From Podarcis muralis (Eukaryota): 64,000 bases of DNA. The notes under the pieces are model-generated. The model was not told where the DNA came from. It saw only the letters and a program-made list of their open reading frames with translations, and ran no database searches. The translations under genes and the position numbers were made by a program. Location of the stretch: assembly GCF_964188315.1 (NCBI RefSeq), contig NC_135667.1:24986001-25050000 (forward strand). The letters run 5' to 3'. Position 1 is the stretch's first letter; each line of letters starts with the position of its first letter. Below, piece after piece: positions 10,976 through 61,860 of this stretch.

Positions 10976-13142
10976 AGATCTATCGCCCAGACTGTGTCCC
11001 TGGACTGTGTGCAGACTGTGATGAACTGTCCTCAGAGTGTGTTCTGGACTGTGCCAGATTGCTGTGTGATTCCTGGCAAGAACTGTTTCGGCTGGAGGAC
11101 AATGGAATGTAAATCGGGTCCTCCCTTAAAGAGGGTATGTGTTGCGGTTGGACATGGCAACCTAACCCTGTGTTGTGGGTGGGTATGTTTGGACAGCACA
11201 ACACCCAAGTGGTAGGTCCCTTGATGCAGGGTTCAATCAGGCCAATGGGATACAGGCTAAACGGATCAAGGGACCTATATATACCTATGCACATGATCCA
11301 GAGCTTCCTCTTTTGGTGCGTGCATCGGAACACCAGCAACGTGTCCGCTGCGAGCCGAGAGAGAGCACAATCTACTTTGATGATCTGCTTGTTGAATCTG
11401 TTTCTTTTTATTCCCCCTTTTCCCCCAGTTTCTCCTTTACTCATTATTCCCTTGATTTAATTTCCCCTCCATGCCTTGCCTTTCCCTTTTCCCCTTGGGA
11501 GGCTTTCTGCCTCATGGGGCTTCGGCCCCTTGAGCTTTGAGCTTGCCGCTGCCTCTGTTCAGCCAGATGGCTTCGCTCATTCTCTGGCTGCGGCTGCAGC
11601 GTTGGGGCTTAGAAATTCAAGTTGATTTCATTTTTAGTGCAGAGAGTCCCCTCTTTGAGCGGTTGCCTTTTATTCTGCTTACAGTCTGTGGGGAATTGCT
11701 CTGGGCTGGAAACCTGCCCCCCCCCCAAAGTGACCCGACTGTCATTTTGCACCTTCTTCTTGTAGGGGTGCCGGGTCTTTTGGTGGGAGCGCCATCTTGT
11801 TTTCGCGGGAGCGCCATCTTAATTGTGTGGATCAATTTTGCTTTGTTCTGTAACCATACTGAGAAAAGTATCCATCATGCTGTCCATTGCCTTGGTGCAA
11901 TGGATGCAATTCTGTCACCAGAAAGCAAAGCACACAGAGGAAGATGGATGGGATGGGAGGAGGAAGAGGATGAATGGCTTTCATCCTAGCTAGCTCACTT
12001 CTGCCCCAGTTCCTCCTCAATGTATGTGAAAGGAGGGAAATGGGGTATTTGCCATCACACTCTTAAAAAAGACTCAAGGTAAAGCAGTTATGGGTAAATG
12101 GTTAATATGATTTGGGAACTTTAATAAGCTAGTGGTTATCTCAGTCATTTATTTATTTATACAATTCAAAGGTGCACACTGTATGAAGGGAGAAAGATGG
12201 CGTCACATTATCAGTGGTCAAGAAGAATCTAAAACACACACATATCACGAAAATATCACTATAATACATCAGAATGCACCTTTAGTTCAGAGATTTGTTT
12301 CTTCTCCTGAAGAAAAAAAAAAAAGCCCCTTGTAAAATCTTCTGGGAATCATTGCTCTGGGGAAGTTTCTGTTATGTTGTGTGGGTTTAGTTATTAAACC
12401 ATAAGCCATAGATTTCCCCTTTGAATTTTATTCATTTATGGTACAGGATGCCCAGTGAAGTCCAGTGTCCTACTTGAGGAATTTGTTTTTCCATTGATTG
12501 TAAATGGTGACCAATAAAGCTGCTGGAGCTGAAAGAAGATCTGATATGGGATTAAAAACCGAATTGTCTTTTGCTGTGTAGTTTTTCATTTTGTTTTGCT
12601 AAATCAAATATTCTGTATCACACCTATTTTTCTTCATTTTTCAATAAACCTTGTTCGAGTGTTAATTCATGGTGCATGTATGTGGGTGGTTGGGGGGGGG
12701 GGGAGTGCAAACCAGGGATGCTTCTGTTGCATCTTATCCCACCTCAAAAATACATGAATTGTTTAAAAATCAATCCCTCTCCCCAGGTAACTATGCTATT
12801 TGGAGCTCTCCTGGGAGGATAGACTCCTAAAAACTCTTGTCTTTTTGTTTAAATACAGAACCCCTGTTAAGTGTCTAAACTTCACCTAAAGAACAGCAAG
12901 TTATTGCTCTAGAATTCTCGGAAAGTTGTAATAGTGGCCCATAAATAAATAATTAATAGAACTTACACATATAAAATGTCTCACAAAATCTATGGAAATG
13001 ACAAAAGATGAATAGTTAATATTGAGGAAGGTCCTATTTCAAAATATAAAGGGGTATATCTAAGTTTACGTGGCAGACCTCAAATTCCCATTTAGTGTTT
13101 CCATGTTTAACATTTTTTTAAAAAGAATTTGGAACTGATTAA

Positions 13143-17287: not shown

Positions 17288-17754
17288 GGTACATGGCCTG
17301 CTCAAACTTAGACACCAGCCAGTAGCAGACAGCATAATGGGGTGCTGGCATACACCTGAGCTCTGCTCACTCACACTGCTGCTTACGAAGAATAATCCAG
17401 TAACGACCAGTTGTGCTAGGAACTCAAAAAGAAGTTATCTTCAGGGTTCCATTTAATCCCAATTATCTAGCAATAAGACAAAATGAATTCAGTTGAGCTT
17501 ATTTTGAGCAAACATTGTTTGGATTGCAGAAAAAAGTGATCAGATCAGATTAATTTTATTTGAATCAAATCATCAGATTATCACACATCATTCACATATA
17601 TATATATGTATGTATAGATGTATAGATGTATATATATATCCCCAAAAATATTCGATAACATTTATTGGCATTGATAAATGTATTTTCCCCAACAAAAATT
17701 CCTTCTTGACTTCCCACTCCTCCTTTCCTGCTTTTTAAAAAAGCCTCTCCTCCT

Positions 17755-18184
17755 ACCATAGACGTGCCACGCCCCTCCCTGGTTGGGCACCCAATAGGGA
17801 AGCTCGGCGGGTGCGTGGCTTGCCGTTCAAATGCGGCCGCGCCAGCCATCCCTGCCATTGCACACACATTTTCTTCAATGCCCGTGTGGCATTTGCTTCA
17901 ATGCCCGTGTGGCAGGGGGCCATGGCACGACCCTCGGTGACATCAGGAGAGAGCCTATAGTTGTATTAGCATCAACAGGCTCCACCTTCTGGTGAATAAA
18001 CCCCCTTTGGGCTCACCCCTCTCCGAGTGGGTGGAGTCTAATGTTCCGTGGTCCAATGCCTAAGCCAATACCTTCTCATATGCTGCAATCAATAAAGTTG
18101 TGGCCTTTTCCTTACCCATTAACCTTACATACTGTGTCCACGTGTCTTTATTCCCCAAGCGGGGATCGGGTCCTCAAATCACAA
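17755..18184 (+). mobile_element. Non-coding YR-family derivative (3' module), 5' boundary approximate
   Basis: gggccatggcacgaccctc...ccaatgcctaagccaatacc...caatcaataaagttgtggcc...cccattaacctt...gcgggga...tcacaa matches the 3' ends of 24781-25577 and 31780-33987. Confidence 0.75.
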
Positions 18185-18819: not shown

Positions 18820-19340
18820 AGGTTCTGATTTTATACCACAGCAAGGAAAACATGTCTATAAACTCCCCATTAAGAATACGCTCACTTTTTTTTACTTTTT
18901 TTTTTTTTTTGCAAGCAAATCCCACAGGGCTGATCCATACGTTTAAAATTACTCTCTCTAATGTGCTTCCCTGGAGTCTAAGCCCTCGTCGCCAAAAGGG
19001 GCTATGACACCATTGTCATGCCTGTGCCTCTTATTTCTACTTTTCCAGACCCATTTTGGGAGACCAGGCAATTTAGCTGTTGTGACCCAGTACCCCTTAA
19101 TCTGGTCCTCATAGTCCATGTCTGAGTAGTCAGACCTACGTGAGGAATCCAATGAATCTGATGAGTCCCATCTGGACTTGCATCCTCTTCTCTTGGTTCT
19201 GTGGGGTCTTGTTCTCTTGCACCGAGACCTATGTGGTTCAGGGCTCAAAGAATTGTCAGATAGGTTAGAGGTGGAAGGAGACCTACAATTGGGCCGAGAC
19301 ATCTGTGAATGGCAGTAGGGAGAATGTGATCTCACTGTGC
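18820..19340 (-). mobile_element. DIRS/Ngaro-type ORF1 (gag-like) remnant
   Basis: SPVGF...ERILNGEFIDMFSLL resembles the SPLG..L...KEKI..GE.ID.FSLL motif of vertebrate DIRS-order ORF1; preceded by the Ser/Arg-rich ORF 18958-19335. Confidence 0.65.
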
Positions 19341-20699: not shown

Positions 20700-20841
20700 T
20701 AGCTAAAAAGGCCCCCTGAACCAATACCGCTCACATTGTGTAATCAATAAAGATGTGGCCTAAATTTTGCCCATCAACCTTTAAACTAAAATACGTGTGT
20801 CAATTCATTTATAGGGGTGACCTGGGGTTCTCAAAGTGCAA
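20700..20841 (+). mobile_element. Short 3' terminus of YR-family element
   Basis: ccaataccgctcacattgtgtaatcaataaagatgtggcctaaattttgcccatcaacc...ctggggttctcaaagtgcaa parallels the end of 31780-33987. Confidence 0.7.
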
Positions 20842-24780: not shown

Positions 24781-25577
24781 TTGTGAGTCGAGGCCCCACT
24801 CCCCGCTTTGTGATGAAATAAGACTCACGGAGACAAGTATTTTAGATTAATGGGCTAAAAATGCCACAACTTTATTGGTTACAGAATGTGAGTGGCATTG
24901 GCTTAGGCATTGGATCCGAACAGACTATACCTGACTCCTGCCCGCTCTGCAGGAAGTCACACAAGGTTTAACAACCAGTAGGGGGAGCTTGTTGATGGAA
25001 ATCAACTGGAAGCTTTCCCTAGAGTCACCAGAGGGTTGTGCCATGGCCCTAGCCACCACCTGGGCTTTGGACAGGAACCACGACCACCAGATTCCTTTAA
25101 CAGAATACCCTTCAAAGGGAGGGGTAGGTGATGGCAACAACCTCCCCTCTAACACACAACACATTTCCAATGCCTAACCACCAAACCTTACAAAGTTGTG
25201 ATGATTTGCTACGAGGTAGGTGAAAAACCAAGTGGCTGGTGCCAATCTGCCAAGTGGAAAAAAATTCCTACCAGGCCCCTTGGACAACCAAGTTGACCAA
25301 CCTAGGTCCATAGCAAGGTCAGGTGCTGAAGCGAAATCTAGAGGGAGGGAGGGAGGGAGGGTGATCTGAGGAAGCCAGAACAACAAGGAAGACCTTGTGG
25401 GCCTGTGACCATTTAAAAACCGCTAAACCACGCCCCCAGCCAGTTGGATTGGATGGCTGGGGTGCATGACATGGGCCCAGGACTCCAGTGATGCAGGGGC
25501 CACACACCCCCTGTGAGCATGGGAAGTGATTCCTGCTCACAACCGCTCCCTTCCAGGAATAAGTAAGTTTTCCATTT
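24781..25577 (-). mobile_element. Non-autonomous YR-family element
   Basis: 5' AAATGG...GGGAGCGG-TTGTGAG, CCAAT/TTTAAA region, 3' module homologous to 31780-32170 (ttaggcattgg, ggccatggcac, ccaatgcctaagccaa, aataaagttgtggc), ending in CTCACAA. Confidence 0.78.
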
Positions 25578-28865: not shown

Positions 28866-31800
28866 TCTGCAGATAGAAGTTAAATAGTTGTGCGTTAGTG
28901 GAGCTTACCAATTTTTGGACATTCTAATTTTTTAAATTATCACCTTAGATATTGCGCTAGTTCACAACAACACATTTATCCACATCAAGAACCATGTATG
29001 CACACTATTAACTGCTGATGTGTTCTTTCATTCTGATATGACATGAAGCTTCATGGGGATAGTATGTGCACTCACATATCTTCAGCTAATATGATTTATC
29101 CACCCTCAAAGACTGGGGGAAAGGCAACAGAGACTGAGTACATACATATACTTTTTAAGCCATGTGCCACATGATGTAAATGGTGCAGTTTTTACAGAAG
29201 TCTTCCATTTTGCCATCAAATGTACATAAACCATTTTTATGAAACATGTAACATTTGGGGGGGGGAGAGAGAGATCACACTGAATTAACTAGATGGGGTA
29301 AAGGAACCACCATTCTAGAAAGTTTATCTGAAATTTCATATAAAACAAAAAAAATGAAATCACTGTGGATATTTTGAAAGATTGTATTATGTGTATCCTC
29401 AGTGAGGCTTTCCTATTTCTTGCTAAATACTTTAGTAAAACATGGAAATGGAATCTTTCTTCAAGTATATTGGAATAAAAAATTGTCAGTTCTCAAATAT
29501 TTGGAGGTTTTCCATCAAAAATATATGACAACAAACTATCATCCAAGTGTATGTGTTTTGAAAGGTGCTCTCCACCCCCCCCCCCAATTGAACAACAGCA
29601 TAGCAATTCACATATTACCTAAGAGCAATAAAGAATCAGCCTGAATGAATTAAGTTCTAGGAATGAAGACTGATTGCTAGAATACTGAAACAGCAAAGAT
29701 TTCAACAACCTGCAAGGAGAATTGAAAAAAATCCAAAACATTATTTTATTTATTTCTAGTAACATGGCCCATGGAAACACTCAAAAAATGGCTATACTTC
29801 TCAATGTGTAGGCAGAATCATATTAATTTCTATCCTATTCAAAAAAGACAAGACAAATTCCATTTGGATAACTAATTTCTATTCTAGTGATTGTATTACC
29901 ATATATTATAATTTATTTCATTTAATTTTTTTGGAAAAGATGACCCAGAAGCATCCATCTCTCAATTAATTTCTGTCATATGCAGTAGGTAATTTGTTTA
30001 ACCAGCCAATCTAATGAGCTGACAAGATAAAGACTGCGCCCTGAATCATTAAAAGCTTCCCATTGTCGGAAATGCCATAGTTACTGAAGAATTCCGGAGT
30101 ATCTGCTTACCACCATTGTTGCTGTGAACAAGAGAGAGTTATGGTAGCACTTGAACTTACTCCATTATCATATTTCTTGTCAATTGTCAAATGTCAGTTG
30201 TCCATATTCCAGCGTGAAATATATCTCTGCACAGTTTTTCCAAGTTTTCTGTTGCCTTCTCCTATATATATATAAAATGATACTTTTTTAAAAAAATAAG
30301 AAGTCCACTTTACACCAACTACTACATCAGTCATTTTGCAATCTTTTTAGAATTGAAAGCTCGAGCATCCTTGAGTCCCTTCATTCTCTTTAAAGAGATC
30401 AATAAGGATTATACTCACCACTGTTTCTCTCAGATTAGAGTGCCAATGTGCTTGACGGTGATATTTATTTGAAGGTACATGGCTTGTCAGGAGGAGGTGG
30501 AGAAGGTGATGTCATCCTCCTTTCCTGTGCTATTTCTGGTTCTCTCTTTGGAGAACATACAAGTCCCATGGTGCTGTGGAAAACAAATGTTGTCCATTTC
30601 CCTACTAGTTCTTTTAATATGCATAAGAATATAAGAGCCTGCAGGATCAATCCAGAAAACGAAGGACACAAAGGGCAGATGAAAAACTCAACCTAGCCAG
30701 CCCAGTTCTGCCCCAGTTGCTCCTCAATATATGTGAAAAGCAAGACGATCAGGAGAATAGTGATATCGCATCAGAGTATTTCCACCCAATCCTTGTATGT
30801 TAAGGTTGTCTCATTCATTAATTTCTGCCAGTGAAATGTACACAATGTGTAAATGAAAAGAAGTGGCAATGTTTCAAGGACAACAAAAATCCAAAACACA
30901 CACACCAGTATAATATCAGCAAACTGCATTCCCCAGATTTACTTGTTCTCAGATGTGCAAACAAAGATGTCATTGCAAAACCTCTTGAGAATCTTTGCTC
31001 CAGGGAAGTTTGTGCTCTCCCCATGTTGGTGCCACTTGAATTAATTTATATTTGCTGAAGGAGACCCCTTGAGGCACAATATTGTACAAAGAAGATGAAA
31101 AAGGCTCCAAAAATTAATTGACTTCTAGTATGCAAGGATACTTTTTCATTTTTTTTCTTGTCGTGCATACCTAAATTTCATATACGTAACATCACGACTA
31201 TTTTTATTGCTCCCCCCACCTCATCTGTTTGCAACACTGGCAAATTCTTTCTGATCATGAACTTCTACTTCTACTTTCTGATCATGAACTTCTATTTTGA
31301 GCTTCCATAAGTGTTCAGCTGAAGGAGCTTAGGTTGCCCTTCATATGAAGGGTGCTCTTCCATCATGTGCATTAGAGCTTACATATGAAGGTTGGGGAAC
31401 TGGGTGCACCCAATGGCAGTGATAGACATTATAGTAGTGCAGTGGCTCTCAATTGACCTCCGCTCAATTGCATCACTGCTGCTTAGCAGGAGTTAAGAAG
31501 CCTGCACCTGAAAGGCTTTCTTTAGTTGTGTCTGTCTGTTCCCTACTGGAAACTCTCACAGACAAAGTGATAATAATTTAAATTAAAAGATCAGGTGATT
31601 GACAGGTACATGGTCTGGTCAAACTTAGACATCAGCCAGCAGCAGACAGCGTAATGGGGTGCTGGCATACACCTGAGCTCTGCTCACTCACATTGCTGCT
31701 TGCAAAGGATAATCCAGTAATGGCCAGTTCTGCTAGGAACTCAAAAGGAAGTTATCTTCAGGCTTCCATTTAATCCCAATTGCGCATCAAGACCCCAGAG

Positions 31801-32138
31801 CATCCCCAAGGATAAATAAATATACACTGAAACAGAATTTTAGATTAAGGTTAATGGGCAAAACTTTAGGGCAAAACTTTATTGATTGCAGCAATGTGAG
31901 TGGTATTGGCTTAGTCATTGTCAATAACTATATCTGGCTCCTGCCCACCTTGCAGGAAATCTGGAAGGAGCTCCGTTGATGGCAACCAACTGATGCTCAC
32001 CCTGGGGTTCCTGCTGGGTCCTGGCATGGCCCTAACCCCTCAAGCGGACTGCGGATGAGATCTAGACCCACAGATTCCTTTACTGGAATACCCTTGTATT
32101 CCAGTAGATGATGATGACCACACCTCCCTTCCGCCGCA

Positions 32139-32770
32139 TCACAATAAGCCAATGCCTAACCGCCACACGAGCCCCACACGAGGCACCAATACCCTCAGAT
32201 CCTGTAACCAATCCTTCAAACCTCTAACAATCTCGTCCATCCACACATCATTTCCGCCATCAGAAAAATGCATACTATCAGCCCGAAACAGGGCTCTATC
32301 ACTGAAGGTAATACCAGGGTGGTGAATCACTATGCCACCCAGCGCCAACACCTTGTTTGACACCTCAGGGTCAACATGCTTCCTGGTTCTGTTGGTGGCA
32401 GCTGGGCATGAACTATTGTGCCAAACCTGACGCACCAGGAACTGCGACCAAAATATTGTGGTTTCTGGGAGCACTGCTGCCAGCTCCTCCAAGTCCTTCT
32501 TAATGCAAGTCCTCAAGTCCATGCCCTTCAGCAGTGGCAAGTCATTTTCGCCCAGCTGCACAACCAACGCAGAAGGTGGGCCCCAAGTGGTCACCTGAGC
32601 CTTCACCAGTGGTAAAACTTCTTTCCAGTGCATCCCACATCTGGACACCCAGGAAACCTTGACTTGAGCAGGTAAGCCGAGCTGGCACCCAAAGCCAGTC
32701 TCCACTGCTCGCACACTGGCCCAGTGCACGATGCTGTGACCCACGATCCACACATGCAACTCTGGCAACA
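32139..32770 (-). CDS. SGNH/GDSL-type hydrolase exon of YR retroelement (open, no ATG)
   Basis: Blocks VWIVGHSIV (S), RCGMHW (G), QLGEND (N), ADSMH (D-x-x-H); the track start is GTG overlapping a splice AG. Confidence 0.82.
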
Positions 32771-32801
32771 CTGAAAAAAAGGAAAAGACAAAACATGTTA
32801 G
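32771..32801 (-). promoter_or_regulatory. 3' splice acceptor before SGNH exon
   Basis: CTAAC-atgttttgtcttttcctttttttCAG|TG; identical in copy B at 44658-44688. Confidence 0.75.
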
Positions 32802-32816
32802 GAGGTGGACAACATG

Positions 32817-33698
32817 CTACTTGCTTTTCTGGATGTATCCCTTATAGGCATTGGACTTTCACCAACCCAAGTTTTTTATCCTGTCCACTGAAAGGCCCCA
32901 ATGAACTGCCGTAATAGCGGCGCCAATCCTGAAAGAATGGGCAGCAAATTCCAATGCTGGCAAGCCACAGGCCGCAATAGCCTTCCACGTAACCCTAGTG
33001 AATTGATGCCTTGCTAAAGGGTTTCTATCCTCATGTATCAAGAAGGGGCAAATCTGTAGGATTCCAGGAGGCCTAATCTGTAAATACCTCCTGGTGTTTT
33101 TTACATGCGCCATTGCAGGCAACTTAAGCAGGGGCCCCTTAGCCCTTTGGTCCATTTTGGACCGACTATCCTGGACTACCAATTCCGCCTCTCCCAAAGA
33201 TATGTCCTCCAAGTGCAGACCCATAGGAACTCCCCCACAGACCTCCTCAAAAACAACCTCACCCATTCTATTGCGATAGAATAATTGGAAGATAACAACC
33301 GTGCCTCATACCGGGACCAGTTTTTTGTGAATTTTACATAATAGGTCAAAGGTGACAGGCCTGCGGCCAACACCAGAAGATGGTTGAAGTCTACGCCAGC
33401 CCTCCAGAGCCTTCCGGAGCACAAAAGCTGCACACAGATCATGGGCAAACAGGGGTTTGCTAAAAAAAGAAATGGCAGCAAACTGGATTTTAAGAGTCTT
33501 AGCTGCATGCCAAATCTAATATAAGTGTGCTATGTATTGTGAAACCTGATCTGTAGAAGAGGGTTGATCCACAGCAATAGATACATTCTGCACATGGAAC
33601 GTTATAAAATCAGCCCAGGTTTTCTTGTAAGATTTAAATGTGGAGGGGGCCAAGGAAGAGACTACTCCCTGCATAACTATGCACTTCCAAGGCTCCAT
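32817..33698 (-). pseudogene. DIRS-type tyrosine recombinase, disrupted
   Basis: SSLAPSTFKSYKKTWADF (N-terminal domain), RKALEGWRR, HEDRNPLARHQF, HSFRIGAA, LGW*KSNAYKGY; internal stops and frameshifts. Confidence 0.9.
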
Positions 33699-34016
33699 AG
33701 GTAAACCAGAAAGGGCTCCGGCAACTGCTATGCGTCCAGTGCCAAAGATCTGAAGTGGTCCATGTGAAAGCAAGACAGAGAAGCCAGGTGAATCCCCAGA
33801 AATGTGCCACCACCTTTTATATGCCGCCACGATCACACCACCGATCTCTAATTGGCCAATAGGCCATGGTGTGATTGTGGGGCCATTGTGTGGACTGGGC
33901 TCAATCTCCCACCTCCTCAAGGATAGTAGAGGGGACACACCTTGGGCCTGCATGCAAGGCGGACCCTCAGTTAGGAAGATCCCATTTATCTAGCAATAAG
34001 CAAAAATGAATTCAGT

Positions 34017-34190
34017 CGAAAAATGTATTTGATCCCCTGCTAAATTTGTCCATTTGCCCTCTGACAAAGAAATGATCAGTCCATAATTTTAATGGTAGGT
34101 TTATTGTAGCTGTGAGAGACAGAATAACAACAAGTAAACCCCCAGAAACCCAGAAGACAAAAGTCAGAGATTGATTGACTTTTAAAATAC
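34017..34190 (+). mobile_element. Tc1 transposon terminal fragment
   Basis: gtatttgatcccctgct...ctgacaaagaaatgatcagt.cataattttaatggtaggtttatt...gtgagagacagaataacaaca resembles the terminal repeat of a Tc1 family I recall from fish/amphibians. Confidence 0.7.
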
Positions 34191-36213: not shown

Positions 36214-37149
36214 TCATGCCAGGAGACTTCTAATTCTTTTTGGTATTTTCAACACGGCCTCTTGGATGTCTTTGTTCCTAAAGCTATAAATAACGGGATT
36301 CATTAGTGGTGGCAAAACATTATATAATAAAGCAGAGAGCAAATCCATTGTTGTAGAAGAAAGTGCTTTAGGTCTCATGTATGAAAACACAGCTGTGCTC
36401 AAAAATAAAGAAAAGACAGTCAGATGGGGGATGCAGGTAGAGAAAGCTTTATATCTGCCTTGAACAGAAGGGATTCTCAGCACAGCAGAGAAGATATAGC
36501 CATAGGAAAGAAAGATGAACCCTCCACAAAATGAATCTACAATAAACCCAATGGCAAAGATCAAAATTTGGTTAACCTTTGTGTCAGTACAAGAAATCTT
36601 AAGCAACTGAGGGACATCACAGAAATACTGCCCAATAATATTGGACCCACAGAAATGTAGCCTGAAAGTGATAATGGTATGTAATGATGAATGGATTGCG
36701 CTGCTTATCCAGGAAGCAGCTGCCATTTGGATGCAGGCATCCCAGTTCATGATTAGCTCATACTGTAAAGGATGGCAGATTGCAACATAGCGATCATAAG
36801 CCATGATAGTGAGCAAGGCAAGCTCAGAACCTGCAAAAGTGAAAACTAAGAAAACCTGTGCGACACAGCCAGCAAAAGAAATCCTTTTGTCATCTGACAA
36901 AGAAGCAGCTATGGATTTGGGGATAGTGGCTGAGATGTAGCAAATGTCTGATAATGATAGGTTGACCAGAAAGAAGTACATAGGAGTGTGCAGTTTGTGG
37001 TTCAGGGCAACAGCAATAGTGATTAGGAAATTCCCCACTAAGGCTGTTAAATAAATGGAGAGAAATATCACAAAGTAAAACAATTGTTCTTCTCGATTAC
37101 TGGAAAACCCCATCAGAAGAAATTCTGTCACTGTAGATTGGTTGGCCAT
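36214..37149 (-). CDS. Olfactory receptor, family 14-like (311 aa subtype)
   Basis: Intact ORF with full OR motif set. Confidence 0.96.
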   Translation of the reverse strand: MANQSTVTEFLLMGFSSNREEQLFYFVIFLSIYLTALVGNFLITIAVALNHKLHTPMYFFLVNLSLSDICYISATIPKSIAASLSDDKRISFAGCVAQVFLVFTFAGSELALLTIMAYDRYVAICHPLQYELIMNWDACIQMAAASWISSAIHSSLHTIITFRLHFCGSNIIGQYFCDVPQLLKISCTDTKVNQILIFAIGFIVDSFCGGFIFLSYGYIFSAVLRIPSVQGRYKAFSTCIPHLTVFSLFLSTAVFSYMRPKALSSTTMDLLSALLYNVLPPLMNPVIYSFRNKDIQEAVLKIPKRIRSLLA

Positions 37150-42133: not shown

Positions 42134-44026
42134 CTTAATTCTTTAGTATTTCTTTAAACAATTTCTTGAAGAGCAGCTCTGCTATTGTGTTTTAGCAGCA
42201 CCAGCAGAGGTGTGCTGCTAAATGTCTAAAATTAGAAAGGAGTTAATGAAAGTCTGTTGGATGAGGAAACATGCAGGCAATTGCATGTGGGGTTGGCCCC
42301 CTATCCCAATATGTGTTAATGGGTGATGCCAGCAGTAGACTTTCAACTGACACCATTCATTCTCCCCAGTACTAATAGAATTTTAGAGTTGAAAAGGAGC
42401 GTGGGGAGCATCTCAGCAAAGACCCATCTTGGTTTCATGTTGAATCAAGATTGAGAAAGTAGAATCAAATACACACTACAGCTTATCAGAGCAACCTTGC
42501 TATTAGATGTAAATAAGCAGATTCGCATTGGTTTGAATGCATAAAGGACATTTACTATGGTGGGTTGTTTTTGTTTTGTTTTTTTGGGTTTTTTTGCGAA
42601 CCATAATGCTGCTTCTTTATTTAAAAAAGCAAATCACATACCACCTAGCATTAATGAAAAATAATTTGGCTTTGGTGAGCGTTCAGAATTTAAGATCAAT
42701 CACCAGAATTTTGAAACACCACTGTATTATCTTCTCTTACCTATAAATACTACCTATTTTTTCATAGAATAATCATGTCTTCATTTATCCTACTGCTGTA
42801 TTAAACATTTTATGGTCTTTTCAGAACTGAAATATGAGCACTAGATGTAAAGAAATTTAAAAAATCTCCTTGGAGTGTGGTTGCATAAAGGAAATTTACA
42901 CTTGATGTTTCAGTATTTTTGCTAACCATAATGCTTTAACTTTCTTTTTAAAAATGCAAACCACACACTTCCTAGCATTAATGAAAAATCATGAAGCTTT
43001 TAAGCCCAATCACCAGAATTTTGAAACAACACATTATTATCTTCTCTTACCTATGGATGTAATCACTTTTTATCAGAGAAAAATTATGTTTGCATTAACC
43101 TTATTTGCAACACTGGCAAATTCTTTCTGATCATGAACTTCTACTTTCTGATCATGAACTTCTATTTTGAGCTTCCATAAGTGTTCAGCTGAAGGAACTT
43201 AGGTTCCCCTTCATATGAAGTGTGCTCTTCCATCATGTGCATTAGAGCTTACATTTGAACGTTGGGGAACTGGGTGCACCCAATGGCAGTAATAGACATT
43301 ATGGTAGTGCAGTGGCTCTCAATTGACCTCCACTCAATTGCATCACTGCTGCGTAGCAGAAGTTAAGAAGCCTGCACCTGAACAGCTTTCTTTAGTTGTG
43401 TCTGTAGGTTCCCTTCTGAAAACTCTCACAGCCAATGTGATAATAATTTAAATTAAAAGGTCAGGTGATTGACAGGTACATGGCCTGCTCAAACTTAGAC
43501 ATCAGCCAGTAGCGGACAGCATAATGGGGTGCTGGCATACACTTGAGCTCTGCTCACTGACACTGCTGCTTAAGAAGGATAATCCAGTAATGGCCAGTTC
43601 TGCTAGGAACTCAAAAGGAAGTTATATTCAGGCTTCCATTTAATCCCAGTTGTGTATCAAGACCCCAGAGCATCCCCAAGGATAAATAAATACACACTGA
43701 AACAGAATTTTAGTTTAAGGTTAATGGGCAAAACTTTAGGGCAAAACTTTATTGATTTCAGCAATGTGAGTGGTATTGGCTTAGTCATTGGCAATAACTA
43801 TATCTGACTCCTGCCCACTTTGCAGGAAATCTGGAAGGCTAAACAACCAAACGAAGGAGCTCCGTCGATGGCAACCAACTGATGCTCACCCTGGGGTTCC
43901 TGTTGGGTCCTGGCATGGCCCTAACCCCTCAAGTGGACTTCGGATGAGATCTAAACCCACAGATTCCTTTACTGGAATACCCTTGTATTCCAGTAGATGG
44001 TATGCCCGCACCTCCCTTCCGCCGCA

Positions 44027-44657
44027 TCACAATAAGCCAATGCCTAACCGCCACACGAGCCCCACACGAGGCACCAATACCCTCAGATCCTGTAACCGAT
44101 CCTTCAAGCCTCTAATGATCTCGTCCATCCACACATCATTTCCGCCATCAGAAAGATTCATACTATCAGCCCGAAACAGGGCTCTATCACTGAAGGTAAT
44201 ACCAGGGTGGAAAATCACTCTGCCACCCAGAGCCAACACCTTGTTTGACACCTCAGGGTCAACATGCTTCCTGGTTCTGTTGGTGGCAGCTGGGCATGAA
44301 CTATTGTGCCAAACATGACACACCAGGAACTGCGACCAAAATATTGTGGTATCTGGGAGCACTGCTGCCACTCCTCCAAGTCCTTCTTAATGCAAGTCCT
44401 CAAGTCCATGCCCTTCAGCAGTGGCAAGTCATTTTCGCCCAGCTGCACAACGAACGCAGAAGGTGGGCCCCAAGTGGTCACCCGAGCCTTCACCAGTGGT
44501 AAAACTTCTTTCCAGCGTATCCCACGTCTGGACACACAGCAAACCTTGACTTCAGCGGGTAAGCCGAGCTGGCACCCAAAGCCAGTCTCCACTGATCGCA
44601 CACTGGCCCAGTGCACGATGCTGTGACCCACGATCCACACGTGCAACTCTGGCAACA
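44027..44657 (-). pseudogene. SGNH hydrolase exon, frameshifted
   Basis: Split between ORFs 44215-44658 and 44027-44371; catalytic His replaced (DSMN). Confidence 0.85.
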
Positions 44658-44703
44658 CTGAAAAAAAGGAAAAGACAAAACATGTTAGGAGGTGGACAAC
44701 ATG

Positions 44704-45600
44704 CTACTTGCTTTTCTGGATGTATCCCTTATAAGCATTGGACTTCCACCAGCCCAATTTTTTTATCCTGTCCACTGAAAGGCCCCAATGAACTGCCGTC
44801 GTAGCGGCGCCAATCCTGAAAGAATGGGCAGCAAATTCCAATGCTGGCAAGCCACAGGCCACAATAGGCTTCCATGTAACCCTAGTGAATTGATGCCTTG
44901 CTAAAGGGTTTCTATCCTCATGTATCAAGAAGGGGCGAATCTGTAGGATTCCAGGAGGCCTAATCTGTAAATACCTCCTGGTGTTTTTTACATGCGCCGT
45001 TGCAGGCAACTTAAGCAGGGCCCCCTTACCCCTTTGGTCCATTTTGGACCGACTATCCCGGACTACCAATTCTGCCTCTCCCAAAGATATGTCCTCTAAG
45101 TGCAGACCCATAGGAACTCCCCCACAGACCTCCTCAAAAGCAACCTCACCCATTCTATTGTGATAGAATAATTGGAAGAGAACAACTGTGCCTCATACCG
45201 GGACCAGCAAACAGATCTTAGTTTTTTGTGAAGTTTACATAATAGGTCAAAGGTGACAGGTCTGCGGCCAACACCAGAAGATGGTTGAAGTCTACGCCAG
45301 CCCTCCAGAGCCTTCCAGAGCACAAAAGCTGCACACAGATCATGGGCAAACAGGGGTTTGCAAAAAAAAAGAAATGGCAGCAGACTGGATTTTCAGAGTC
45401 TTAGCTGCACGCCAAAGCTAATATAAGTGTGCTATGTATTGTGAAACCTGATCTGTAGAAGAGGGTTGATCCACAGCAATAGATAAATTCTGCACACGGA
45501 ACGTTATAAAATCAGCCCAGGTTTTCTTGTAAGATTTAAATGTGGAGGGGGCCAAGGAAGAGACTACTCCCTGCATAACTATGCACTTCCAAGGCTCCAT
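44704..45600 (-). pseudogene. DIRS-type tyrosine recombinase, disrupted N-terminally
   Basis: C-terminal HSFRIGAATTA...LGWWKSNAYKGY is open; a stop after AHLY and frameshifts lie upstream. Confidence 0.9.
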
Positions 45601-46017
45601 AGGTACACCAGAAAAGGCTCCGGCAACTGCTATGCGTCCAGTGCCAAAGATCTGAAGTGGTCCATGTGAAAGCGAGACAGAGAAGCCAGGTGAATCCCCA
45701 GAAATGTGCCACCACCTTTTATATGCCCCCACGATCACACCACCGATCTCTGATTCGCCAATAGGCCATAGTGTGATTGTGGGGCCATTGTGTGGGCTGG
45801 GCTCAATCTCCCACCTCCTCAAGGATAGTAGAGGGGACACACCTTGGGCCTGCATGCAAGGCGGACCCTCAGTTAGGAAGATCCCATTTATCTAGCAATA
45901 AGCCAAAATGAATTCAGTCGAGCTTATTTTGAGCAAACATTATTTCGATTGCAGAAAAAAGTGACCAGATCAATTTTATTTCTATCAAATCACCATATTA
46001 CCACACATCATATATAT

Positions 46018-46165
46018 CCCTGCTAAATTTGTCCATTTCCCCTCTGACAAAGAAATGATCAGTCCATAATTTTAATGGTAGGTTTATTGCAGCTGTGAGA
46101 GACAGAATAACAACAAGTAAACCCCCAGAAACCCAGAAGACAAAAGTCAGAAATTGATTGACTTT
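46018..46165 (+). mobile_element. Tc1 transposon terminal fragment
   Basis: Duplicate of 34017-34190 with a different left-side deletion. Confidence 0.68.
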
Positions 46166-48196: not shown

Positions 48197-49132
48197 TCAT
48201 GCCAGGAGACTTCTAATTCTTTTCGGTATTTTCAACACGGCCTCTTGGATGTCTTTGTTCCTAAAGCTATAAATAACGGGATTCATTAGTGGTGGCAAAA
48301 CATTATATAATAAAGCAGAGAGCAAATCCATTGTTGTAGAAGAAAGTGCTTTAGGTCTCATGTATGAAAACACAGCTGTGCTCATAAATAAAGAAAAGAC
48401 AGTCAGGTGGGGGATGCAGGTAGAGAAAGCTTTATATCTGCCTTGAACAGAAGGGATTCTCAGCACAGCAGAGAAGATATAGCCATAGGAAAGAAAGATG
48501 AACCCTCCACAAAATGAATCTACAATAAACCCAATGGCAAAGATCAAAATTTGGTTAACCTTTGTGTCAGTACAAGAAATCTTAAGCAACTGAGGGACAT
48601 CACAGAAATACTGCCCAATAATATTGGACCCACAGAAATGTAGCCTGAAAGTGATAATGGTATGTAATGATGAATGGATTGCGCTGCTTATCCAGGAAGC
48701 AGCTGCCATTTGGATGCAGGCATCCCAGTTCATGATTAGCTCATACTGTAGAGGATGGCAGATTGCAGCATAGCGATCATAAGCCATGATAGTGAGCAAG
48801 GCAAGCTCAGAACCTGCAAAAGTGAAAACTAAGAAAACCTGTGCGACACAGCCAGCAAAAGAAATCCTTTTGTCATCTGACAAAGAAGCAGCTATGGATT
48901 TGGGAATAGTGGCTGAGATGTAGCAAATGTCTGATAATGATAGGTTGACCAGAAAGAAGTACATAGGAGTGTGCAGTTTGTGGTTCAGGGCAACAGCAAT
49001 AGTGATTAGGAAATTCCCCACTAAGGCTGTTAAATAAATGGAGAGAAATATCACAAAGTAAAACAATTGTTCTTCTCGATTACTGGAAAACCCCATCAGA
49101 AGAAATTCTGTCACTGTAGATTGGTTGGCCAT
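48197..49132 (-). CDS. Olfactory receptor, family 14-like (311 aa subtype)
   Basis: Intact ORF; differs from 36214-37149 at two residues I could see. Confidence 0.96.
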   Translation of the reverse strand: MANQSTVTEFLLMGFSSNREEQLFYFVIFLSIYLTALVGNFLITIAVALNHKLHTPMYFFLVNLSLSDICYISATIPKSIAASLSDDKRISFAGCVAQVFLVFTFAGSELALLTIMAYDRYAAICHPLQYELIMNWDACIQMAAASWISSAIHSSLHTIITFRLHFCGSNIIGQYFCDVPQLLKISCTDTKVNQILIFAIGFIVDSFCGGFIFLSYGYIFSAVLRIPSVQGRYKAFSTCIPHLTVFSLFMSTAVFSYMRPKALSSTTMDLLSALLYNVLPPLMNPVIYSFRNKDIQEAVLKIPKRIRSLLA

Positions 49133-53090: not shown

Positions 53091-54083
53091 TCAGGGAGTA
53101 GATGTTCCTGTTTGCATGTTATCCCACAGACCTATACAGCCACATTTTCCTTTGGTATGCTTTTTCCAGGATCTGCCATAGATTTTCCACAACACTGATT
53201 TGATCTCCTTGTTTCTCATGCTATAAATTATTGGATTCATCAGTGGGGGAAGAACACAGTAAGCCATGGCAACTGAACTGTCCAGACCCACCACAGATTT
53301 GGAAGTTAGTTTTAGGTTGGCGAAGATGCCAGTGAAAGTAAATAAGGAGACAACGCTGAGATGAGGAATGCAAGTAGAGAAGGCTTTGTCTCTACTCTGT
53401 GCCGAAGGAATTCTGAACACTGTTTTGAAGATCTCCACATAGGACACAACTATGAAACTGAAGCAGCCGAGTCCTAGACATGCACTCAAGCCCAGAGCCA
53501 CAGCTTCAACAAGGTACAAGTCAGTGCAGGAGAGCTTAAGTAGTTGAGGTATCTCACAGAAGAACTGATTGATGGTGTTGGAACAGAAAGGAACAGCGAA
53601 GGTGGCTCCAGTGTGTAATGTTGCAAAAAGGAGACCACTGATCCATGTACTAGTCACCATTTGGATGCAGGCTTCCTTATTCACTACTGTTTCATAATGC
53701 AATGGGTCACAAATGGCAACATACCGGTCATACGCCATGACTGTGAGGAGGAAAAAGTCTGATGCCATGAAGAAAAAGAGAAAGAAGACTTGAGCAATGC
53801 ACTCTGAATAAGATATCAACCTGGTATTCATGAGACAGTTAGCCATGGCTTTTAGTATTGTGACTGAGATGTACCCAAGGTCCATAACAGACAAATTTGC
53901 CAGGAAGAAGTACATGGGATTGTGAAGATGGGGATCTGTGACCACAGCCACAAGGATGAGGATGTTCCCTAACAATGCTGCCATATAGATCAGTAGAAAG
54001 ATCACAAAATATACAAGCTGTATCTCCCGAACTTCAGAGAAACCTAGGAGGAGGAATTCCGTAATGGTGCTTTCATTGGACAT
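53091..54083 (-). CDS. Olfactory receptor, family 14-like (330 aa subtype)
   Basis: Intact ORF, paralog of 40719-41711. Confidence 0.94.
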   Translation of the reverse strand: MSNESTITEFLLLGFSEVREIQLVYFVIFLLIYMAALLGNILILVAVVTDPHLHNPMYFFLANLSVMDLGYISVTILKAMANCLMNTRLISYSECIAQVFFLFFFMASDFFLLTVMAYDRYVAICDPLHYETVVNKEACIQMVTSTWISGLLFATLHTGATFAVPFCSNTINQFFCEIPQLLKLSCTDLYLVEAVALGLSACLGLGCFSFIVVSYVEIFKTVFRIPSAQSRDKAFSTCIPHLSVVSLFTFTGIFANLKLTSKSVVGLDSSVAMAYCVLPPLMNPIIYSMRNKEIKSVLWKIYGRSWKKHTKGKCGCIGLWDNMQTGTSTP

Positions 54084-60994: not shown

Positions 60995-61860
60995 AATGAC
61001 CGCTCCCCGCTTAAAACAGGGGGCGCCCTTTGCATGGACACGTGCAGCCCCTAGATCTGGAGCGGCTCCAACAGCATAGGCTTGGCCTTGCTTTCCCTCA
61101 GGTGGGATACCTGGAGGTCTCCGCCTACCTCAGTCAGTTGTCCAATCCCACCTGGGGGAAGCGTTGCCAAGGAGACCAGGGCAGGTAGGGGAGGGATTAC
61201 CTGCCCACACAATAGAGGGAGGATCTTACCTGGGAATCCTCACTTGGCTCCAGAGCTTCTCCCACCCTACCCACCCTCAGTTAATGTCTTATTTTGCAGG
61301 TTAACTTTTCTTCACAGGTTTTGCAGGTTAACTTTTCTTCACAGGTATGCGGGCGCTGCTACGTTAAGGTCGCTGTTAAAGGGCCGGAAAGGAATTTCCC
61401 TGCATTGGCAGGTTTTGCCTTTCCCGTAGCAAAACGTCACAACTTTGGCGGTATCAGGCCTTGGGCGGAATCCTTTAGTCCATCTTCCTCTTTGCAGTGG
61501 CGATACCAGGGTTCCCCGTTAATGGGGTTTCTGAAGGGAGGCTTTGACCGTACGCCGAAAGGTCGTCATTGCTCTCCCCTGCGGCGGCGGCGTAACGGGG
61601 GCGGCTATCTCTGCTTGAACATATGTTCTCCAGAGCTGGCCCATCCCCCCCCCACACACACACTGGATAACCCTGATGCTCCCTAGGTCCCCGGCTGGGG
61701 ACTGGGGAGGGAGAACGCCCAATGCCTGAGCCAAGGTCTACCCACATTTGAAATTTAATAAAGTTGTGGCCAATTTAATCCCATAGCATGTTGTCTTGAG
61801 TCGTTATTCCACATGACGGGGGGACCGCGCAGGATCTGGGGACTCCGCCTGTCCACGCAA
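60995..61860 (+). mobile_element. Non-autonomous YR-family element
   Basis: AATGACC...CCCT-TTGCATGGACA ... aataaagttgtggcc ... TGTCCACGCAA; reverse complement of 5970-6819. Confidence 0.78.

What the first reader, a model, noticed from the sequence alone, without database searches (positions are those of the whole stretch)
31780..33987. Shared terminal architecture of a YR retroelement family: AA ends plus offset short inverted repeat that would fold the circle junction
Seen: five elements of three sequence subtypes have the same end design when read in element sense. Each starts AA(A)TG, runs a ~30-35 nt leader, then a 7-11 nt box complementary to the extreme 3' end, which finishes in CAA. 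Examples: 60995-61860 (AATG...CCCT-TTGCATGGACA / TGTCCACGCAA); 5970-6819 (TTGCGTGGAC / GTCCATGCAA); 24781-25577 (AAATGG...GCGG-TTGTGAG / CTCACAA); 31780-33987 and 43650-45889 (AAATGG...CCGCC-TTGCATGCA / ...GCGCAA or CACAA, weaker match). Established: classic DIRS have long ITRs, a 3' extension and an internal complementary region; Ngaro have split direct repeats. Neither design is visible here. Inference: in a circular intermediate the 3' end, the AA and the leader would form a short hairpin with the crossover at its base. That resembles folded single-stranded substrates used by other tyrosine recombinases (integron attC). It could be an undescribed YR lineage with a non-autonomous retinue.
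Basis: partly seen in the sequence, partly recalled or inferred. Interest (0 to 1): 0.8.

Follow-up and report, generated by a model that had tools for sequence, protein, structure and literature searches.

The report
Ngaro retrotransposon remnants with palindromic ends
These are leftover pieces of an already known kind of lizard jumping gene (Ngaro-like retrotransposons), not a new lineage, but the short matching sequences at their two ends are real and form a conserved hairpin-shaped junction that probably marks where the element's recombinase cuts and joins.

Summary
The end design is real, but the "new lineage" reading is not supported.

**Boundaries.** An empty paralogous site (17463-17464) fixes the ends of 31780-33987 exactly. 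It also shows a single AA duplicated at both ends. 31780-33987 and 43650-45889 are one insertion copied by a ~12 kb segmental duplication.

**What the element is.** It is a Ngaro-like retrotransposon with gag and almost all of RT/RH deleted. It keeps the last ~33 RT/RH codons, a stop-ridden tyrosine recombinase (YR), an open SGNH-hydrolase ORF and one B repeat.

**The ~800-870 bp elements.** These are single A-X-B units, like the "solo AB repeats" already described for Ngaro.

**Full-length relatives.** Copies in Zootoca, Lacerta, Eublepharis, Anolis, Hemicordylus, a frog and Podarcis muralis (probably the window's own genome) all carry ordinary A1...B1A2B2 split direct repeats.

**What survives.** In all these families:
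- B ends in ...CAA and A starts AA.
- A 28-36 nt leader carries its own small palindrome.
- A box at position 31-39 is complementary to the B end.

Box and B end co-vary across nine families (cognate pairing is the best of 362,880 permutations). Real B1|A2 junctions fold as one long hairpin (z -3.1 to -7.0 in five of six). For 31780-33987 itself the box match is only 4 nt.

I read the junction as the element's recombination site. That function is inferred, not shown.

The parts
31780..33987 (-). E4: internally deleted Ngaro-like element. It has the A region, an RT/RH C-terminal remnant, a YR pseudogene, an SGNH ORF and a single B region.
   Evidence: Boundaries fixed by the empty site. Content.
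33958..33987 (-). E4 terminal AA plus the 28-nt leader (element positions 1-30).
   Evidence: The leader hairpin is not significant in this old copy.
33947..33957 (-). E4 5' box TTGCATGCAGG at element position 31. Only TTGC pairs with the 3' GCAA.
31780..31790 (-). E4 3' terminus ...TTGATGCGCAA. The terminal AA is the duplicated or crossover dinucleotide.
33815..33855 (-). Promoter-like CCAAT (33851-33855) and TATAAAA (33815-33821) inside the A region. They imply a transcription start near element position 200, downstream of the leader and box.
   Evidence: Motif scan. Promoter function is inferred, not tested.
33683..33781 (-). Remnant of the last ~33 codons of the RT/RH ORF (SLSCFHMDHFRSL...LWSLGS), abutting the A region. 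It marks the internal deletion of gag and RT/RH.
   Evidence: tblastn with the Zootoca and Podarcis pol ORFs, E = 7e-4 and 6e-6; blastn.
32826..33698 (-). Tyrosine recombinase pseudogene: a 291-codon frame with three in-frame stops (the first at 33516-33518) and a locally disturbed frame.
   Evidence: tblastn 47% identity to the Zootoca YR over 305 aa, E = 1e-82; translation; homologue searches.
32139..32771 (-). Open 210-aa SGNH/GDSL-type hydrolase ORF downstream of the YR.
   Evidence: 53% identity to the SGNH ORF of an intact Podarcis element. Relatives hit Pfam PF13472 at E = 6e-5 to 9e-5, below Pfam's cut-off. Lizard homologues.
31780..32165 (-). Single B region (3' UTR) with AATAAA at 31878-31883, about 100 nt before the element's end. 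No A2 or B2 follows.
43650..45889 (-). E5: segmental-duplication copy of E4, with the same flanks and 95% identity.
17455..17471 (+). Empty paralogous target site. The single TT (AA in element sense) lies at 17463-17464.
60995..61860 (+). E1: single A-X-B unit (solo AB type). Box at 61030-61040, X motif at 61429-61445, AATAAA at 61757-61762, 3' end at 61850-61860.
5970..6819 (-). E2: second copy of the E1 family (92% identical, different flanks). Box at 6774-6784, 3' end at 5970-5980.
24781..25577 (-). E3: single A-X-B unit of another family. The exact 7-nt box is 25536-25542 (the first 7 nt, in element sense, of the 11-nt stretch 25532-25542 listed). X motif at 25193-25209, 3' end at 24781-24791. 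It is colinear with A2-X-B2 of Lacerta, Zootoca and Podarcis elements.
17917..18184 (+). E6: B-region fragment ending ...ATCACAA. Its 5' boundary was not determined.
20700..20832 (+). E7: 5'-truncated B fragment ending ...GTGCAA. The start coordinate is approximate.

Best explanation
**What it is (shown)**
- The elements are derivatives of Ngaro-like tyrosine-recombinase retrotransposons in a lacertid lizard genome, probably Podarcis muralis.
- Full-length relatives read A1-gag-RT/RH-YR-SGNH-B1-A2-X-B2.
- 31780-33987, and its duplicate 43650-45889, keep the A region, the last ~33 RT/RH codons, a dead YR, an open SGNH ORF and one B.
- The 800-870 bp elements are single A-X-B units.

**Architecture (shown)**
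In every squamate family examined:
- B ends ...CAA and A starts AA.
- One AA is shared by the B1|A2 junction, both element ends and the empty target.
- The next 28-36 nt contain a centred small palindrome.
- A box starting TTG at position 31-39 is complementary to the B end.

The B|A junction is therefore one long imperfect palindrome: outer stem, AA/TT, internal loop, inner hairpin.

**How it works (inferred)**
- The junction is the element's attachment site. The YR recognises it and exchanges strands at the AA with an AA in the target, which leaves AA on both sides.
- The internal B1|A2 copy preserves this site. It lets transcripts that start about 200 nt inside A, and end about 70-100 nt before the end of B, regenerate full ends.
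- Recombination between A1 and A2 gives the A-X-B units. Recombination between B1 and B2 gives the single-B copies. It could be homologous, or YR-mediated between the directly repeated sites.
- Such single units lack an internal junction copy, so they should be dead ends for retrotransposition.

**Confidence by part**
About 0.85 for the identity (Ngaro-like derivatives, single units). About 0.45 for the junction being the recombinase's attachment site. The overall figure of 0.6 is for the whole statement.
For: **Identity**
- SGNH ORF homologues are found only in lizards.
- The window's SGNH ORF is 53% identical to that of an intact Podarcis element.
- The YR is 43-47% identical to YRs of elements that carry SDRs.
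- An RT/RH remnant sits next to the A region.
- Relatives carry RVT_1, Phage_integrase and GDSL domains.
- An SGNH ORF after the YR, and the absence of a methyltransferase, are stated features of Ngaro-like elements (PMC9210276).

**Split direct repeats in relatives**
Zootoca, Lacerta, Eublepharis, the frog Eleutherodactylus, Anolis, Hemicordylus and Podarcis all show A1/A2 and B1/B2 at about 99-100% identity.

**Single-unit forms**
- The same family occurs with SDRs (L012) and as a single-B copy with intact ORFs (L004), 94% identical.
- E3 is colinear with A2-X-B2, not with A1-5'UTR.
- The X motif is present in E1, E2 and E3 and absent from E4 and E5.
- Solo AB repeats are already described for Ngaro (PMC8547959).

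**AA crossover**
- Empty site in the window.
- B1|A2 junctions carry a single AA.
- A terminal di- or trinucleotide shared with the target is known for DIRS elements (PMC7192593, PMC9210276).

**Palindromic junction**
- Permutation test, p = 2.8e-6.
- Junction folds: z = -7.0, -5.5, -3.6, -3.6, -3.1 and -2.5.
- Leader hairpins: combined p = 2e-5 by Fisher's method.
- The frog element has unrelated sequence (crossover CAGTC; TCCCTCCAGTC against GACTGGAGGGGA) but the same design.
- In young copies the arms are imperfect, with bulges. They are therefore not simply copied from one another in each cycle.
Against: - No full-length copy of the window's own three families was recovered. That these families once had SDRs is inferred from relatives.
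- In E4 and E5 the box is barely detectable.
- The recombination-site role is untested.
- The two outer arms lie about 30 bp apart. That is far more than the 6-8 bp spacer of canonical tyrosine-recombinase sites (from my knowledge of Cre, Flp and Xer sites, not tested here). A plain double-stranded arm-spacer-arm site does not fit without folding or extra binding sites.
- The AA lies outside the inner palindrome, which on its own looks like a canonical core site.
- The sense strand folds slightly better (G-T pairs 11 against 5, not significant). That fits an RNA role as well as a DNA one.
- I could not read the original Ngaro descriptions. The junction palindrome may already be described there.
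Confidence: 0.6

Rival explanations
1. The junction palindrome is a structure of the single-stranded genome (RNA or cDNA) that serves replication, not the recombinase. Possible roles are self-splinting of cDNA ends for circularisation, priming, strand transfer or packaging.
For: - Stems extend to about 30 nt with bulges, longer than one recombinase footprint.
- Outer-arm sequence is free to vary as long as pairing is kept.
- The sense strand folds slightly better, with more G-T pairs.
- DIRS-1 intermediates are single-stranded cDNA and need an internal copy of the junction (PMC7192593).
- A second co-varying long-range complementarity exists between X and the poly(A) region of B, which looks like an RNA or cDNA feature.
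Against: - The strand asymmetry is not significant (p = 0.21).
- The crossover dinucleotide sits exactly at the inner edge of the outer stem. That is expected if the structure positions the recombinase.
- The two roles do not exclude each other.
Confidence: 0.3
2. The A-X-B units (E1, E2, E3) and the single-B copies are not passive recombination leftovers. The YR excises them as DNA circles by recombining directly repeated junction sites, and the circles re-integrate at AA. They would then be a DNA-level non-autonomous retinue.
For: - Each unit carries both halves of the junction site.
- E1 and E2 are 92% identical at different loci, with AA on both sides.
- A related unit sits at a third locus in Podarcis (L003 14091-14813).
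- An intact single-B copy (L004) exists beside its SDR-bearing sister (L012).
Against: - Homologous recombination between A1/A2 or B1/B2 gives identical products, as it does for solo LTRs (PMC8547959).
- No circle junction or excision footprint was observed.
- Nothing here separates the two routes.
Confidence: 0.25
3. One reading: an undescribed tyrosine-recombinase retroelement lineage without split repeats or ITR/ICR. Its minimal ends fold into an attC-like single-stranded substrate, and it mobilises short non-autonomous elements.
For: - The window copies have no A1/A2 or B1/B2 repeats and no internal complementary region.
- The junction folds as stem, internal loop, stem, loop.
Against: - Coding content and homology are Ngaro-like.
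- Full-length relatives with the very same end design carry ordinary SDRs in seven genomes, including Podarcis.
- E4 and E5 are a dead, internally deleted copy.
Confidence: 0.05
4. 31780-33987 is a Crypton-type DNA transposon: a YR without RT.
For: - It has no RT domain.
- It has a YR plus an accessory ORF.
- It shares short microhomology with the target.
Against: - It keeps the C-terminal ~33 codons of an RT/RH ORF just upstream of the YR, as full-length Ngaro-like elements do.
- Its A and B regions are homologous to those of retroelements.
- The YR clusters with YRs of RT-bearing lizard elements.
Confidence: 0.02

Closest known systems
Ngaro-like retrotransposons (order DIRS), such as the zebrafish and Xenopus elements with an SGNH hydrolase ORF (DIRS-53_XT)
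   Same: - YR followed by an SGNH/GDSL hydrolase ORF, with no methyltransferase.
- Full-length relatives have gag, RT/RH and A1...B1A2B2 split direct repeats (PMC9210276).
   Different: - The window copies are single units without RT and without split repeats.
- A unique spacer X (48-174 nt) lies between A2 and B2.
- The B|A junction is an extended palindrome. I did not find this described in the papers I could read.
Solo AB repeats of Ngaro elements in Cafeteria burkhardae (PMC8547959)
   Same: Isolated A-B units scattered in the genome. They are interpreted as recombination products of the 5' and 3' repeats, like solo LTRs.
   Different: - This is a vertebrate host.
- The units include the X spacer with a conserved motif.
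- Single-B full-length copies also occur (L004).
DIRS1-like elements (inverted terminal repeats plus an internal complementary region)
   Same: - The circle junction is palindromic.
- One arm is offset by a terminal extension.
- A short di- or trinucleotide is shared by both ends, the junction copy and the target.
- An internal copy of the junction restores the ends (PMC7192593, PMC9210276).
   Different: - Arms are only about 5-30 nt rather than hundreds.
- The internal junction copy is direct (B1|A2), not complementary. No ICR was found.
- There is an SGNH ORF rather than a methyltransferase.
Folded single-stranded recombination substrates of bacterial tyrosine recombinases (integron attC, CTX phage attP)
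   Same: Predicted geometry is stem, internal loop, stem, terminal loop. The exchange point lies at a stem boundary. The comparison rests on my recollection of those systems.
   Different: - No sequence relation.
- This is a eukaryotic retroelement.
- Single-strand recombination is untested here.
- Which strand folds is undetermined.
Cryptons (YR DNA transposons)
   Same: A YR, and short microhomology with the target rather than a fixed-length target-site duplication (PMC13465315).
   Different: The window element descends from an RT-encoding element and shares its A and B regions with retroelements.

Membership tests
Ngaro-like retrotransposons | Encodes a tyrosine recombinase | tested here: met
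   - 291-codon YR frame at 32826-33698, 47% identical to the Zootoca element's YR.
- HxxR and the C-terminal Y motif are visible.
- It is a pseudogene with in-frame stops.
Ngaro-like retrotransposons | Encodes reverse transcriptase / RNase H | tested here: not met
   - Only the last ~33 codons of the RT/RH ORF remain in the window copies.
- Full-length relatives encode RVT_1.
- The window copy is a deletion derivative, not an intact member.
Ngaro-like retrotransposons | Split direct repeats A1-[ORFs]-B1-A2-B2 | tested here: not met
   - No A1/A2 or B1/B2 repeat in any window copy.
- The repeats are present in seven full-length relatives.
- The window copies match single units, A-X-B or A-int-B.
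Ngaro-like retrotransposons | SGNH hydrolase ORF downstream of the YR and no methyltransferase domain (vertebrate Ngaro, PMC9210276) | tested here: met
   - ORF 32139-32771 is 53% identical to the Podarcis element's SGNH ORF.
- Relatives hit PF13472 at E about 1e-4, below Pfam's cut-off.
- No methyltransferase hit in any ORF scanned.
Ngaro-like retrotransposons | RT/YR phylogenetic placement with Ngaro rather than DIRS, PAT or VIPER | not tested
   No reference DIRS, PAT or VIPER sequences were in hand. Placement rests on domain order, SDRs in relatives and the SGNH ORF.
DIRS1-like retrotransposons | Long inverted terminal repeats | tested here: not met
   Only a short offset inverted repeat of 4-40 nt.
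DIRS1-like retrotransposons | Internal complementary region matching both termini | tested here: not met
   - No internal reverse-complement copy of the ends above shuffle level.
- In full-length relatives the internal junction copy is direct, B1|A2.
Crypton DNA transposons | YR-only element with no reverse-transcriptase ancestry | tested here: not met
   An RT/RH C-terminal remnant lies directly upstream of the YR.
Folded single-stranded YR substrates (attC-like) | The recombination site forms by intrastrand pairing of imperfect inverted repeats | tested here: inconclusive
   - Predicted hairpins are significant and the arms co-vary.
- Co-variation is equally expected for two protein-binding arms in duplex DNA.
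- The strand bias is not significant.
Folded single-stranded YR substrates (attC-like) | Single-strand exchange on the folded strand by the recombinase | not testable with these tools
   This needs biochemistry.

The most novel reading that the evidence does not exclude
In tetrapod Ngaro elements the B|A junction is a conserved hairpin of stem, internal loop, stem and loop. It acts as a folded single-stranded substrate for the element's tyrosine recombinase, with strand exchange at the AA on the inner edge of the outer stem, as in integron attC or CTX phage. The same sites let the recombinase resolve the A-int-B / A-X-B tandem into circles that can re-integrate as DNA. A retrotransposon would then also have a Crypton-like DNA route and a mobile mini-element.
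Probability: 0.15. Interest if true: 0.7.

Novelty: new member of a known kind. Interest (0 to 1): 0.4.

Why it matters
How tyrosine-recombinase retrotransposons integrate is still largely a model. Only DIRS-1 has been tested experimentally.

If the reading here holds, it gives a defined candidate attachment site for Ngaro elements that is short enough to synthesise. The site has an outer arm, an AA crossover, an inner palindrome and a second arm. It co-varies across squamates and a frog, and the crossover is pinned by an empty site.

That makes the recombinase's substrate directly testable: duplex or folded strand, and which strand. It also offers a common logic for DIRS and Ngaro. In DIRS, long inverted repeats form a palindromic circle junction. 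In Ngaro, split direct repeats hide a short palindromic junction.

For annotation, ~800 bp A-X-B units and single-B copies should be called Ngaro derivatives rather than new families.

Tried and rejected
- **Split direct repeats or an ICR inside the window copies.** I compared the first 120 nt of each copy with the rest, on both strands. Nothing rose above shuffle level.
- **Pfam on the window ORFs.** No significant family. Identity had to come from homologues and relatives.
- **Rfam and tRNA scans of the whole window.** Nothing found, so these are not SINE-like or known RNA elements.
- **Strand asymmetry of the hairpin.** I compared folding energies and G-T counts on the plus and minus strands. 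There is a slight plus-strand bias but it is not significant.
- **5' ends of three elements.** I could not fix the 5' end of E6 (17917-18184), of the L003 Ngaro or of the L011 element. The L004 5' end was tentative until L012 confirmed it.
- **L009 (Paroedura).** No split repeats seen; not pursued.
- **Literature.** One search was too loose and returned nothing useful. The original Ngaro description and the 2015 review are not held. I therefore cannot say whether the junction palindrome was noted there.
- **Extended target homology.** The E4 target shares TGGGAT with the element start just after the AA. The other ten insertions show at most CAA or GCAA. I treat the E4 case as probable coincidence.

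Full report
**Setting**

The window is a tandemly duplicated cluster of class II olfactory receptor genes. Repeat units recur at spacings of about 12 kb. One receptor matches, at 99%, a protein whose name and source the tool hides. The tool hides these for proteins encoded by the window itself. That protein's longest contig is 59,601,746 bp, the length of Podarcis muralis OZ076966.1. The next best hits are from Lacerta agilis and Zootoca vivipara at 90-93%. I therefore infer a lacertid host, probably P. muralis.

**Checking the observation**

Read on the minus strand, 31780-33987 starts AAATGGGATC... and ends ...GATGCGCAA.
- Its twin, 43650-45889, has the same flanks on both sides and is 95% identical. 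The two are one insertion carried along by a segmental duplication.
- A third paralogous unit lacks the insertion. It reads aatcccaa-TT-atctagc at 17455-17471, and its flanks align at about 92% right up to that dinucleotide.
It also shows that one AA (element sense) is present once in the empty site and at both ends of the insertion.

The other window copies:
- E1 (60995-61860) and E2 (5970-6819, minus strand) are 92% identical and have different flanks. Their ends are AATGACC... and ...CCA(C/T)GCAA.
- Their 5' box at position 36 and their 3' end are complementary over 10-11 nt, with one mismatch each. Each mismatch is a CpG transition, and each box matches the other copy's 3' end perfectly.
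- In E1 the repeat continues imperfectly to about 40 nt, scoring above all 300 shuffles.
- E3 (24781-25577, minus strand) has an exact 7-nt box at position 36.
- For E4 and E5 only TTGC/GCAA pairs, which is not above chance.
- Two further 3' fragments end in CACAA (18184) and GTGCAA (20832).

**What the 2.2 kb element encodes**

Reading in element sense, E4 contains:
- A 291-codon tyrosine recombinase frame, 47% identical to the YR of a Zootoca element. It is interrupted by three stops and a locally disturbed frame. E5 has more damage, and two disruptions are shared by both copies.
- An open 210-aa ORF, 53% identical to the SGNH/GDSL hydrolase ORF of an intact Podarcis element.
- Immediately upstream of the YR, at 33683-33781, the last ~33 codons of an RT/RH ORF, joined to about 206 nt of 5' sequence.

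E4/E5 is therefore an internal-deletion derivative of a gag-RT/RH-YR-SGNH retroelement. It is not a YR-only transposon. A YR followed by an SGNH ORF, with no methyltransferase, is the published signature of vertebrate Ngaro-like elements (PMC9210276).

**Full-length relatives**

I fetched loci through the SGNH and YR homologues. Seven full-length elements all show classic split direct repeats, with A1/A2 and B1/B2 about 99-100% identical:

| Locus | Species |
|---|---|
| L001 | Zootoca vivipara |
| L005 | Lacerta agilis |
| L006 | Eublepharis macularius |
| L008 | Anolis carolinensis |
| L010 | Hemicordylus capensis |
| L007 | Eleutherodactylus coqui (frog) |
| L012 | Podarcis muralis |

A unique spacer X of 48-174 nt lies between A2 and B2.

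**What the short elements are**

- E3 aligns with the end of A2, then X, then B2 of the Lacerta, Zootoca and Podarcis elements. It does not align with the sequence that follows A1.
- A conserved X motif (GCAAA-nnn-TCACAACTT) is present in E1, E2 and E3 and absent from E4 and E5.
- So E1, E2 and E3 are single A-X-B units, and E4/E5 is A-(deleted interior)-B.
- Such units are known. Solo AB repeats of Ngaro, attributed to recombination between the terminal repeats, were described in Cafeteria (PMC8547959).
- In Podarcis the same family exists with SDRs (L012) and as a single-B copy with all four ORFs open (L004), 94% identical.
- L003 and L011 also end in a single B.

**What survives: the junction design**

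Because SDR-bearing elements define their ends internally, the B1|A2 junction can be read exactly. In every squamate family:
- B ends ...CAA.
- A single AA joins B to A.
- The following 28-36 nt hold a centred palindrome. One example is GCGCTTTATAT-CATACA-ATATAAAGCG in Zootoca.
- A box starting TTG at position 31-39 is complementary to the B end.

The frog element uses a different crossover (CAGTC) and unrelated arms (TCCCTCCAGTC against GACTGGAGGGGA at position 42), but the same layout.

Four tests support this:
- *Co-variation.* I scored each family's 5' region against every family's 3' end, using an alignment anchored at the terminus. The cognate assignment was the single best of 362,880 permutations for nine independent families, p = 2.8e-6. 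Cognate pairs averaged 11.5 and non-cognate pairs 5.7.
- *A co-varying pair.* The base after TTG pairs as C-G in six families and T-A in three.
- *Folding.* The real internal junctions fold as one long hairpin. The outer stem (B end with box, AA with TT) is followed by a small internal loop and the leader hairpin. Z-scores are -7.0 (Zootoca), -5.5 (Lacerta), -3.6 (Eublepharis), -3.6 (Hemicordylus) and -3.1 (frog). Anolis scores -2.5 with an alternative fold.
- *Leader hairpins.* These give a combined p of 2e-5.

Old window copies score weakly: E1 z = -2.1 and E4 z = -0.1. In young copies the arms are imperfect and bulged, so they are not regenerated from one another. Complementarity is maintained by selection.

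**Mechanism**

Shown:
- The exchange point lies within or beside the AA.
- The internal junction is a full copy of the site formed when the two ends are joined.

Inferred:
- The A region carries CCAAT and TATAAAA motifs at element positions about 133-173, so transcripts should start near position 200.
- AATAAA lies about 100 nt before the end of B.
- Transcripts should therefore lack the leader, the box and the B end, and restore them from B1|A2. This is the usual logic of split repeats and of the DIRS internal complementary region (PMC7192593).
- I take the palindromic junction to be the recombinase's attachment site.

A plain duplex arm-spacer-arm site does not fit, because the outer arms lie about 30 bp apart. 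If the strand folds, the outer stem, the AA with the internal loop, and the inner stem together give such a geometry. It remains untested, and the sense strand folds only marginally better. A role in RNA or cDNA, such as end-joining, priming or packaging, is a serious rival and may coexist with the recombinase role.

Single units could arise by homologous recombination. They could also arise by YR-mediated resolution between the directly repeated sites, which would release circles able to re-integrate. The data cannot separate these routes.

**Comparison and novelty**

- The elements are new members of a known kind: Ngaro-like retrotransposons, solo AB units and a deleted copy.
- A terminal dinucleotide shared with the target is known for DIRS elements (PMC9210276, PMC7192593).
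- I did not find the junction palindrome, its co-variation or the X spacer motif described in the accessible papers. I could not read the original Ngaro papers.

**Verdict**

It is strong for the set of elements and weak at the finding's own coordinates.
The architecture and the fold hold; the new lineage does not.
- Interest is moderate.

Noticed in passing
window 61437-61445 with 61757-61771; 25193-25201 with about 24862-24876; L001 15495-15511; L007 and L010 X/B regions: A second long-range complementarity. The motif at the end of spacer X (CACAACTTT) is the reverse complement of AAAGTTGTG, which lies immediately 3' of the AATAAA in B. Both sides change together in the frog (CACAGCC / GGCTGTG) and in Hemicordylus (GGCCACG / CGTGGCC). 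This may be an RNA or cDNA pairing involved in poly(A)-site choice or priming.
   Followed up: partly
window 17463-17475 compared with 33975-33987: The E4 target shares TGGGAT with the element's own start just after the AA: target AA-t-TGGGAT, element AA-A-TGGGAT. The L012 insertion shares GCAA with its target. Other insertions share only AA or CAA. This is either occasional microhomology or coincidence.
   Followed up: partly
window 1155-63446 (for example 36214-37149, 48197-49132, 53091-54083, 58118-59110): A dense tandem array of intact OR14-like olfactory receptor genes in units duplicated at up to about 95-99% identity. The hidden 99% hit lies on a 59,601,746-bp contig, the length of Podarcis muralis OZ076966.1. 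This suggests the window's source.
   Followed up: partly
window 19003-19323 (-): A weak gag-like remnant (32% identity to the Zootoca Ngaro gag region, E = 0.006), followed by an A-rich tract. It may be another decayed Ngaro fragment lying between E6 and E7.
   Followed up: no
window 32772-32825 and 44659-44703 (-): Between the YR stop and the SGNH start lies a polypyrimidine tract ending in CAG, which resembles a 3' splice site. NCBI gene models in Podarcis fuse YR and SGNH parts. Whether the hydrolase is expressed by splicing, by reinitiation or not at all is unknown.
   Followed up: no
window 34000-34130 and 45960-46100: The sequence flanking the E4/E5 insertion resembles the terminal region of a Tc1/mariner-type transposon. 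I recognised this by eye and from memory and did not test it. If so, the Ngaro copy lies beside or inside another transposon.
   Followed up: no
L003 8143-8371 and 13013-13368: A degraded Podarcis Ngaro copy is bracketed by two direct copies (94% identical) of about 230 bp of non-Ngaro sequence. This could be a host repeat, a local duplication or something linked to insertion. It is unexplained.
   Followed up: no
window 32160-32165; L001 about 14556; L004 about 12820-12860: The B region begins with a conserved TGGCGG(T)TAGGC motif that overlaps the end of the SGNH ORF. It is repeated at the start of B2 in full-length elements. Its position recalls a primer-binding or strand-transfer site. Not tested.
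   Followed up: no
L008 8639-8640; L007 9817-9823: In two elements whose A1 and A2 are otherwise 99-100% identical, the only difference sits at the very first nucleotides of A1. Anolis has AG against AA. The frog has CAGTAC against CAGTC. This is what imperfect homology at the crossover would leave behind.
   Followed up: no
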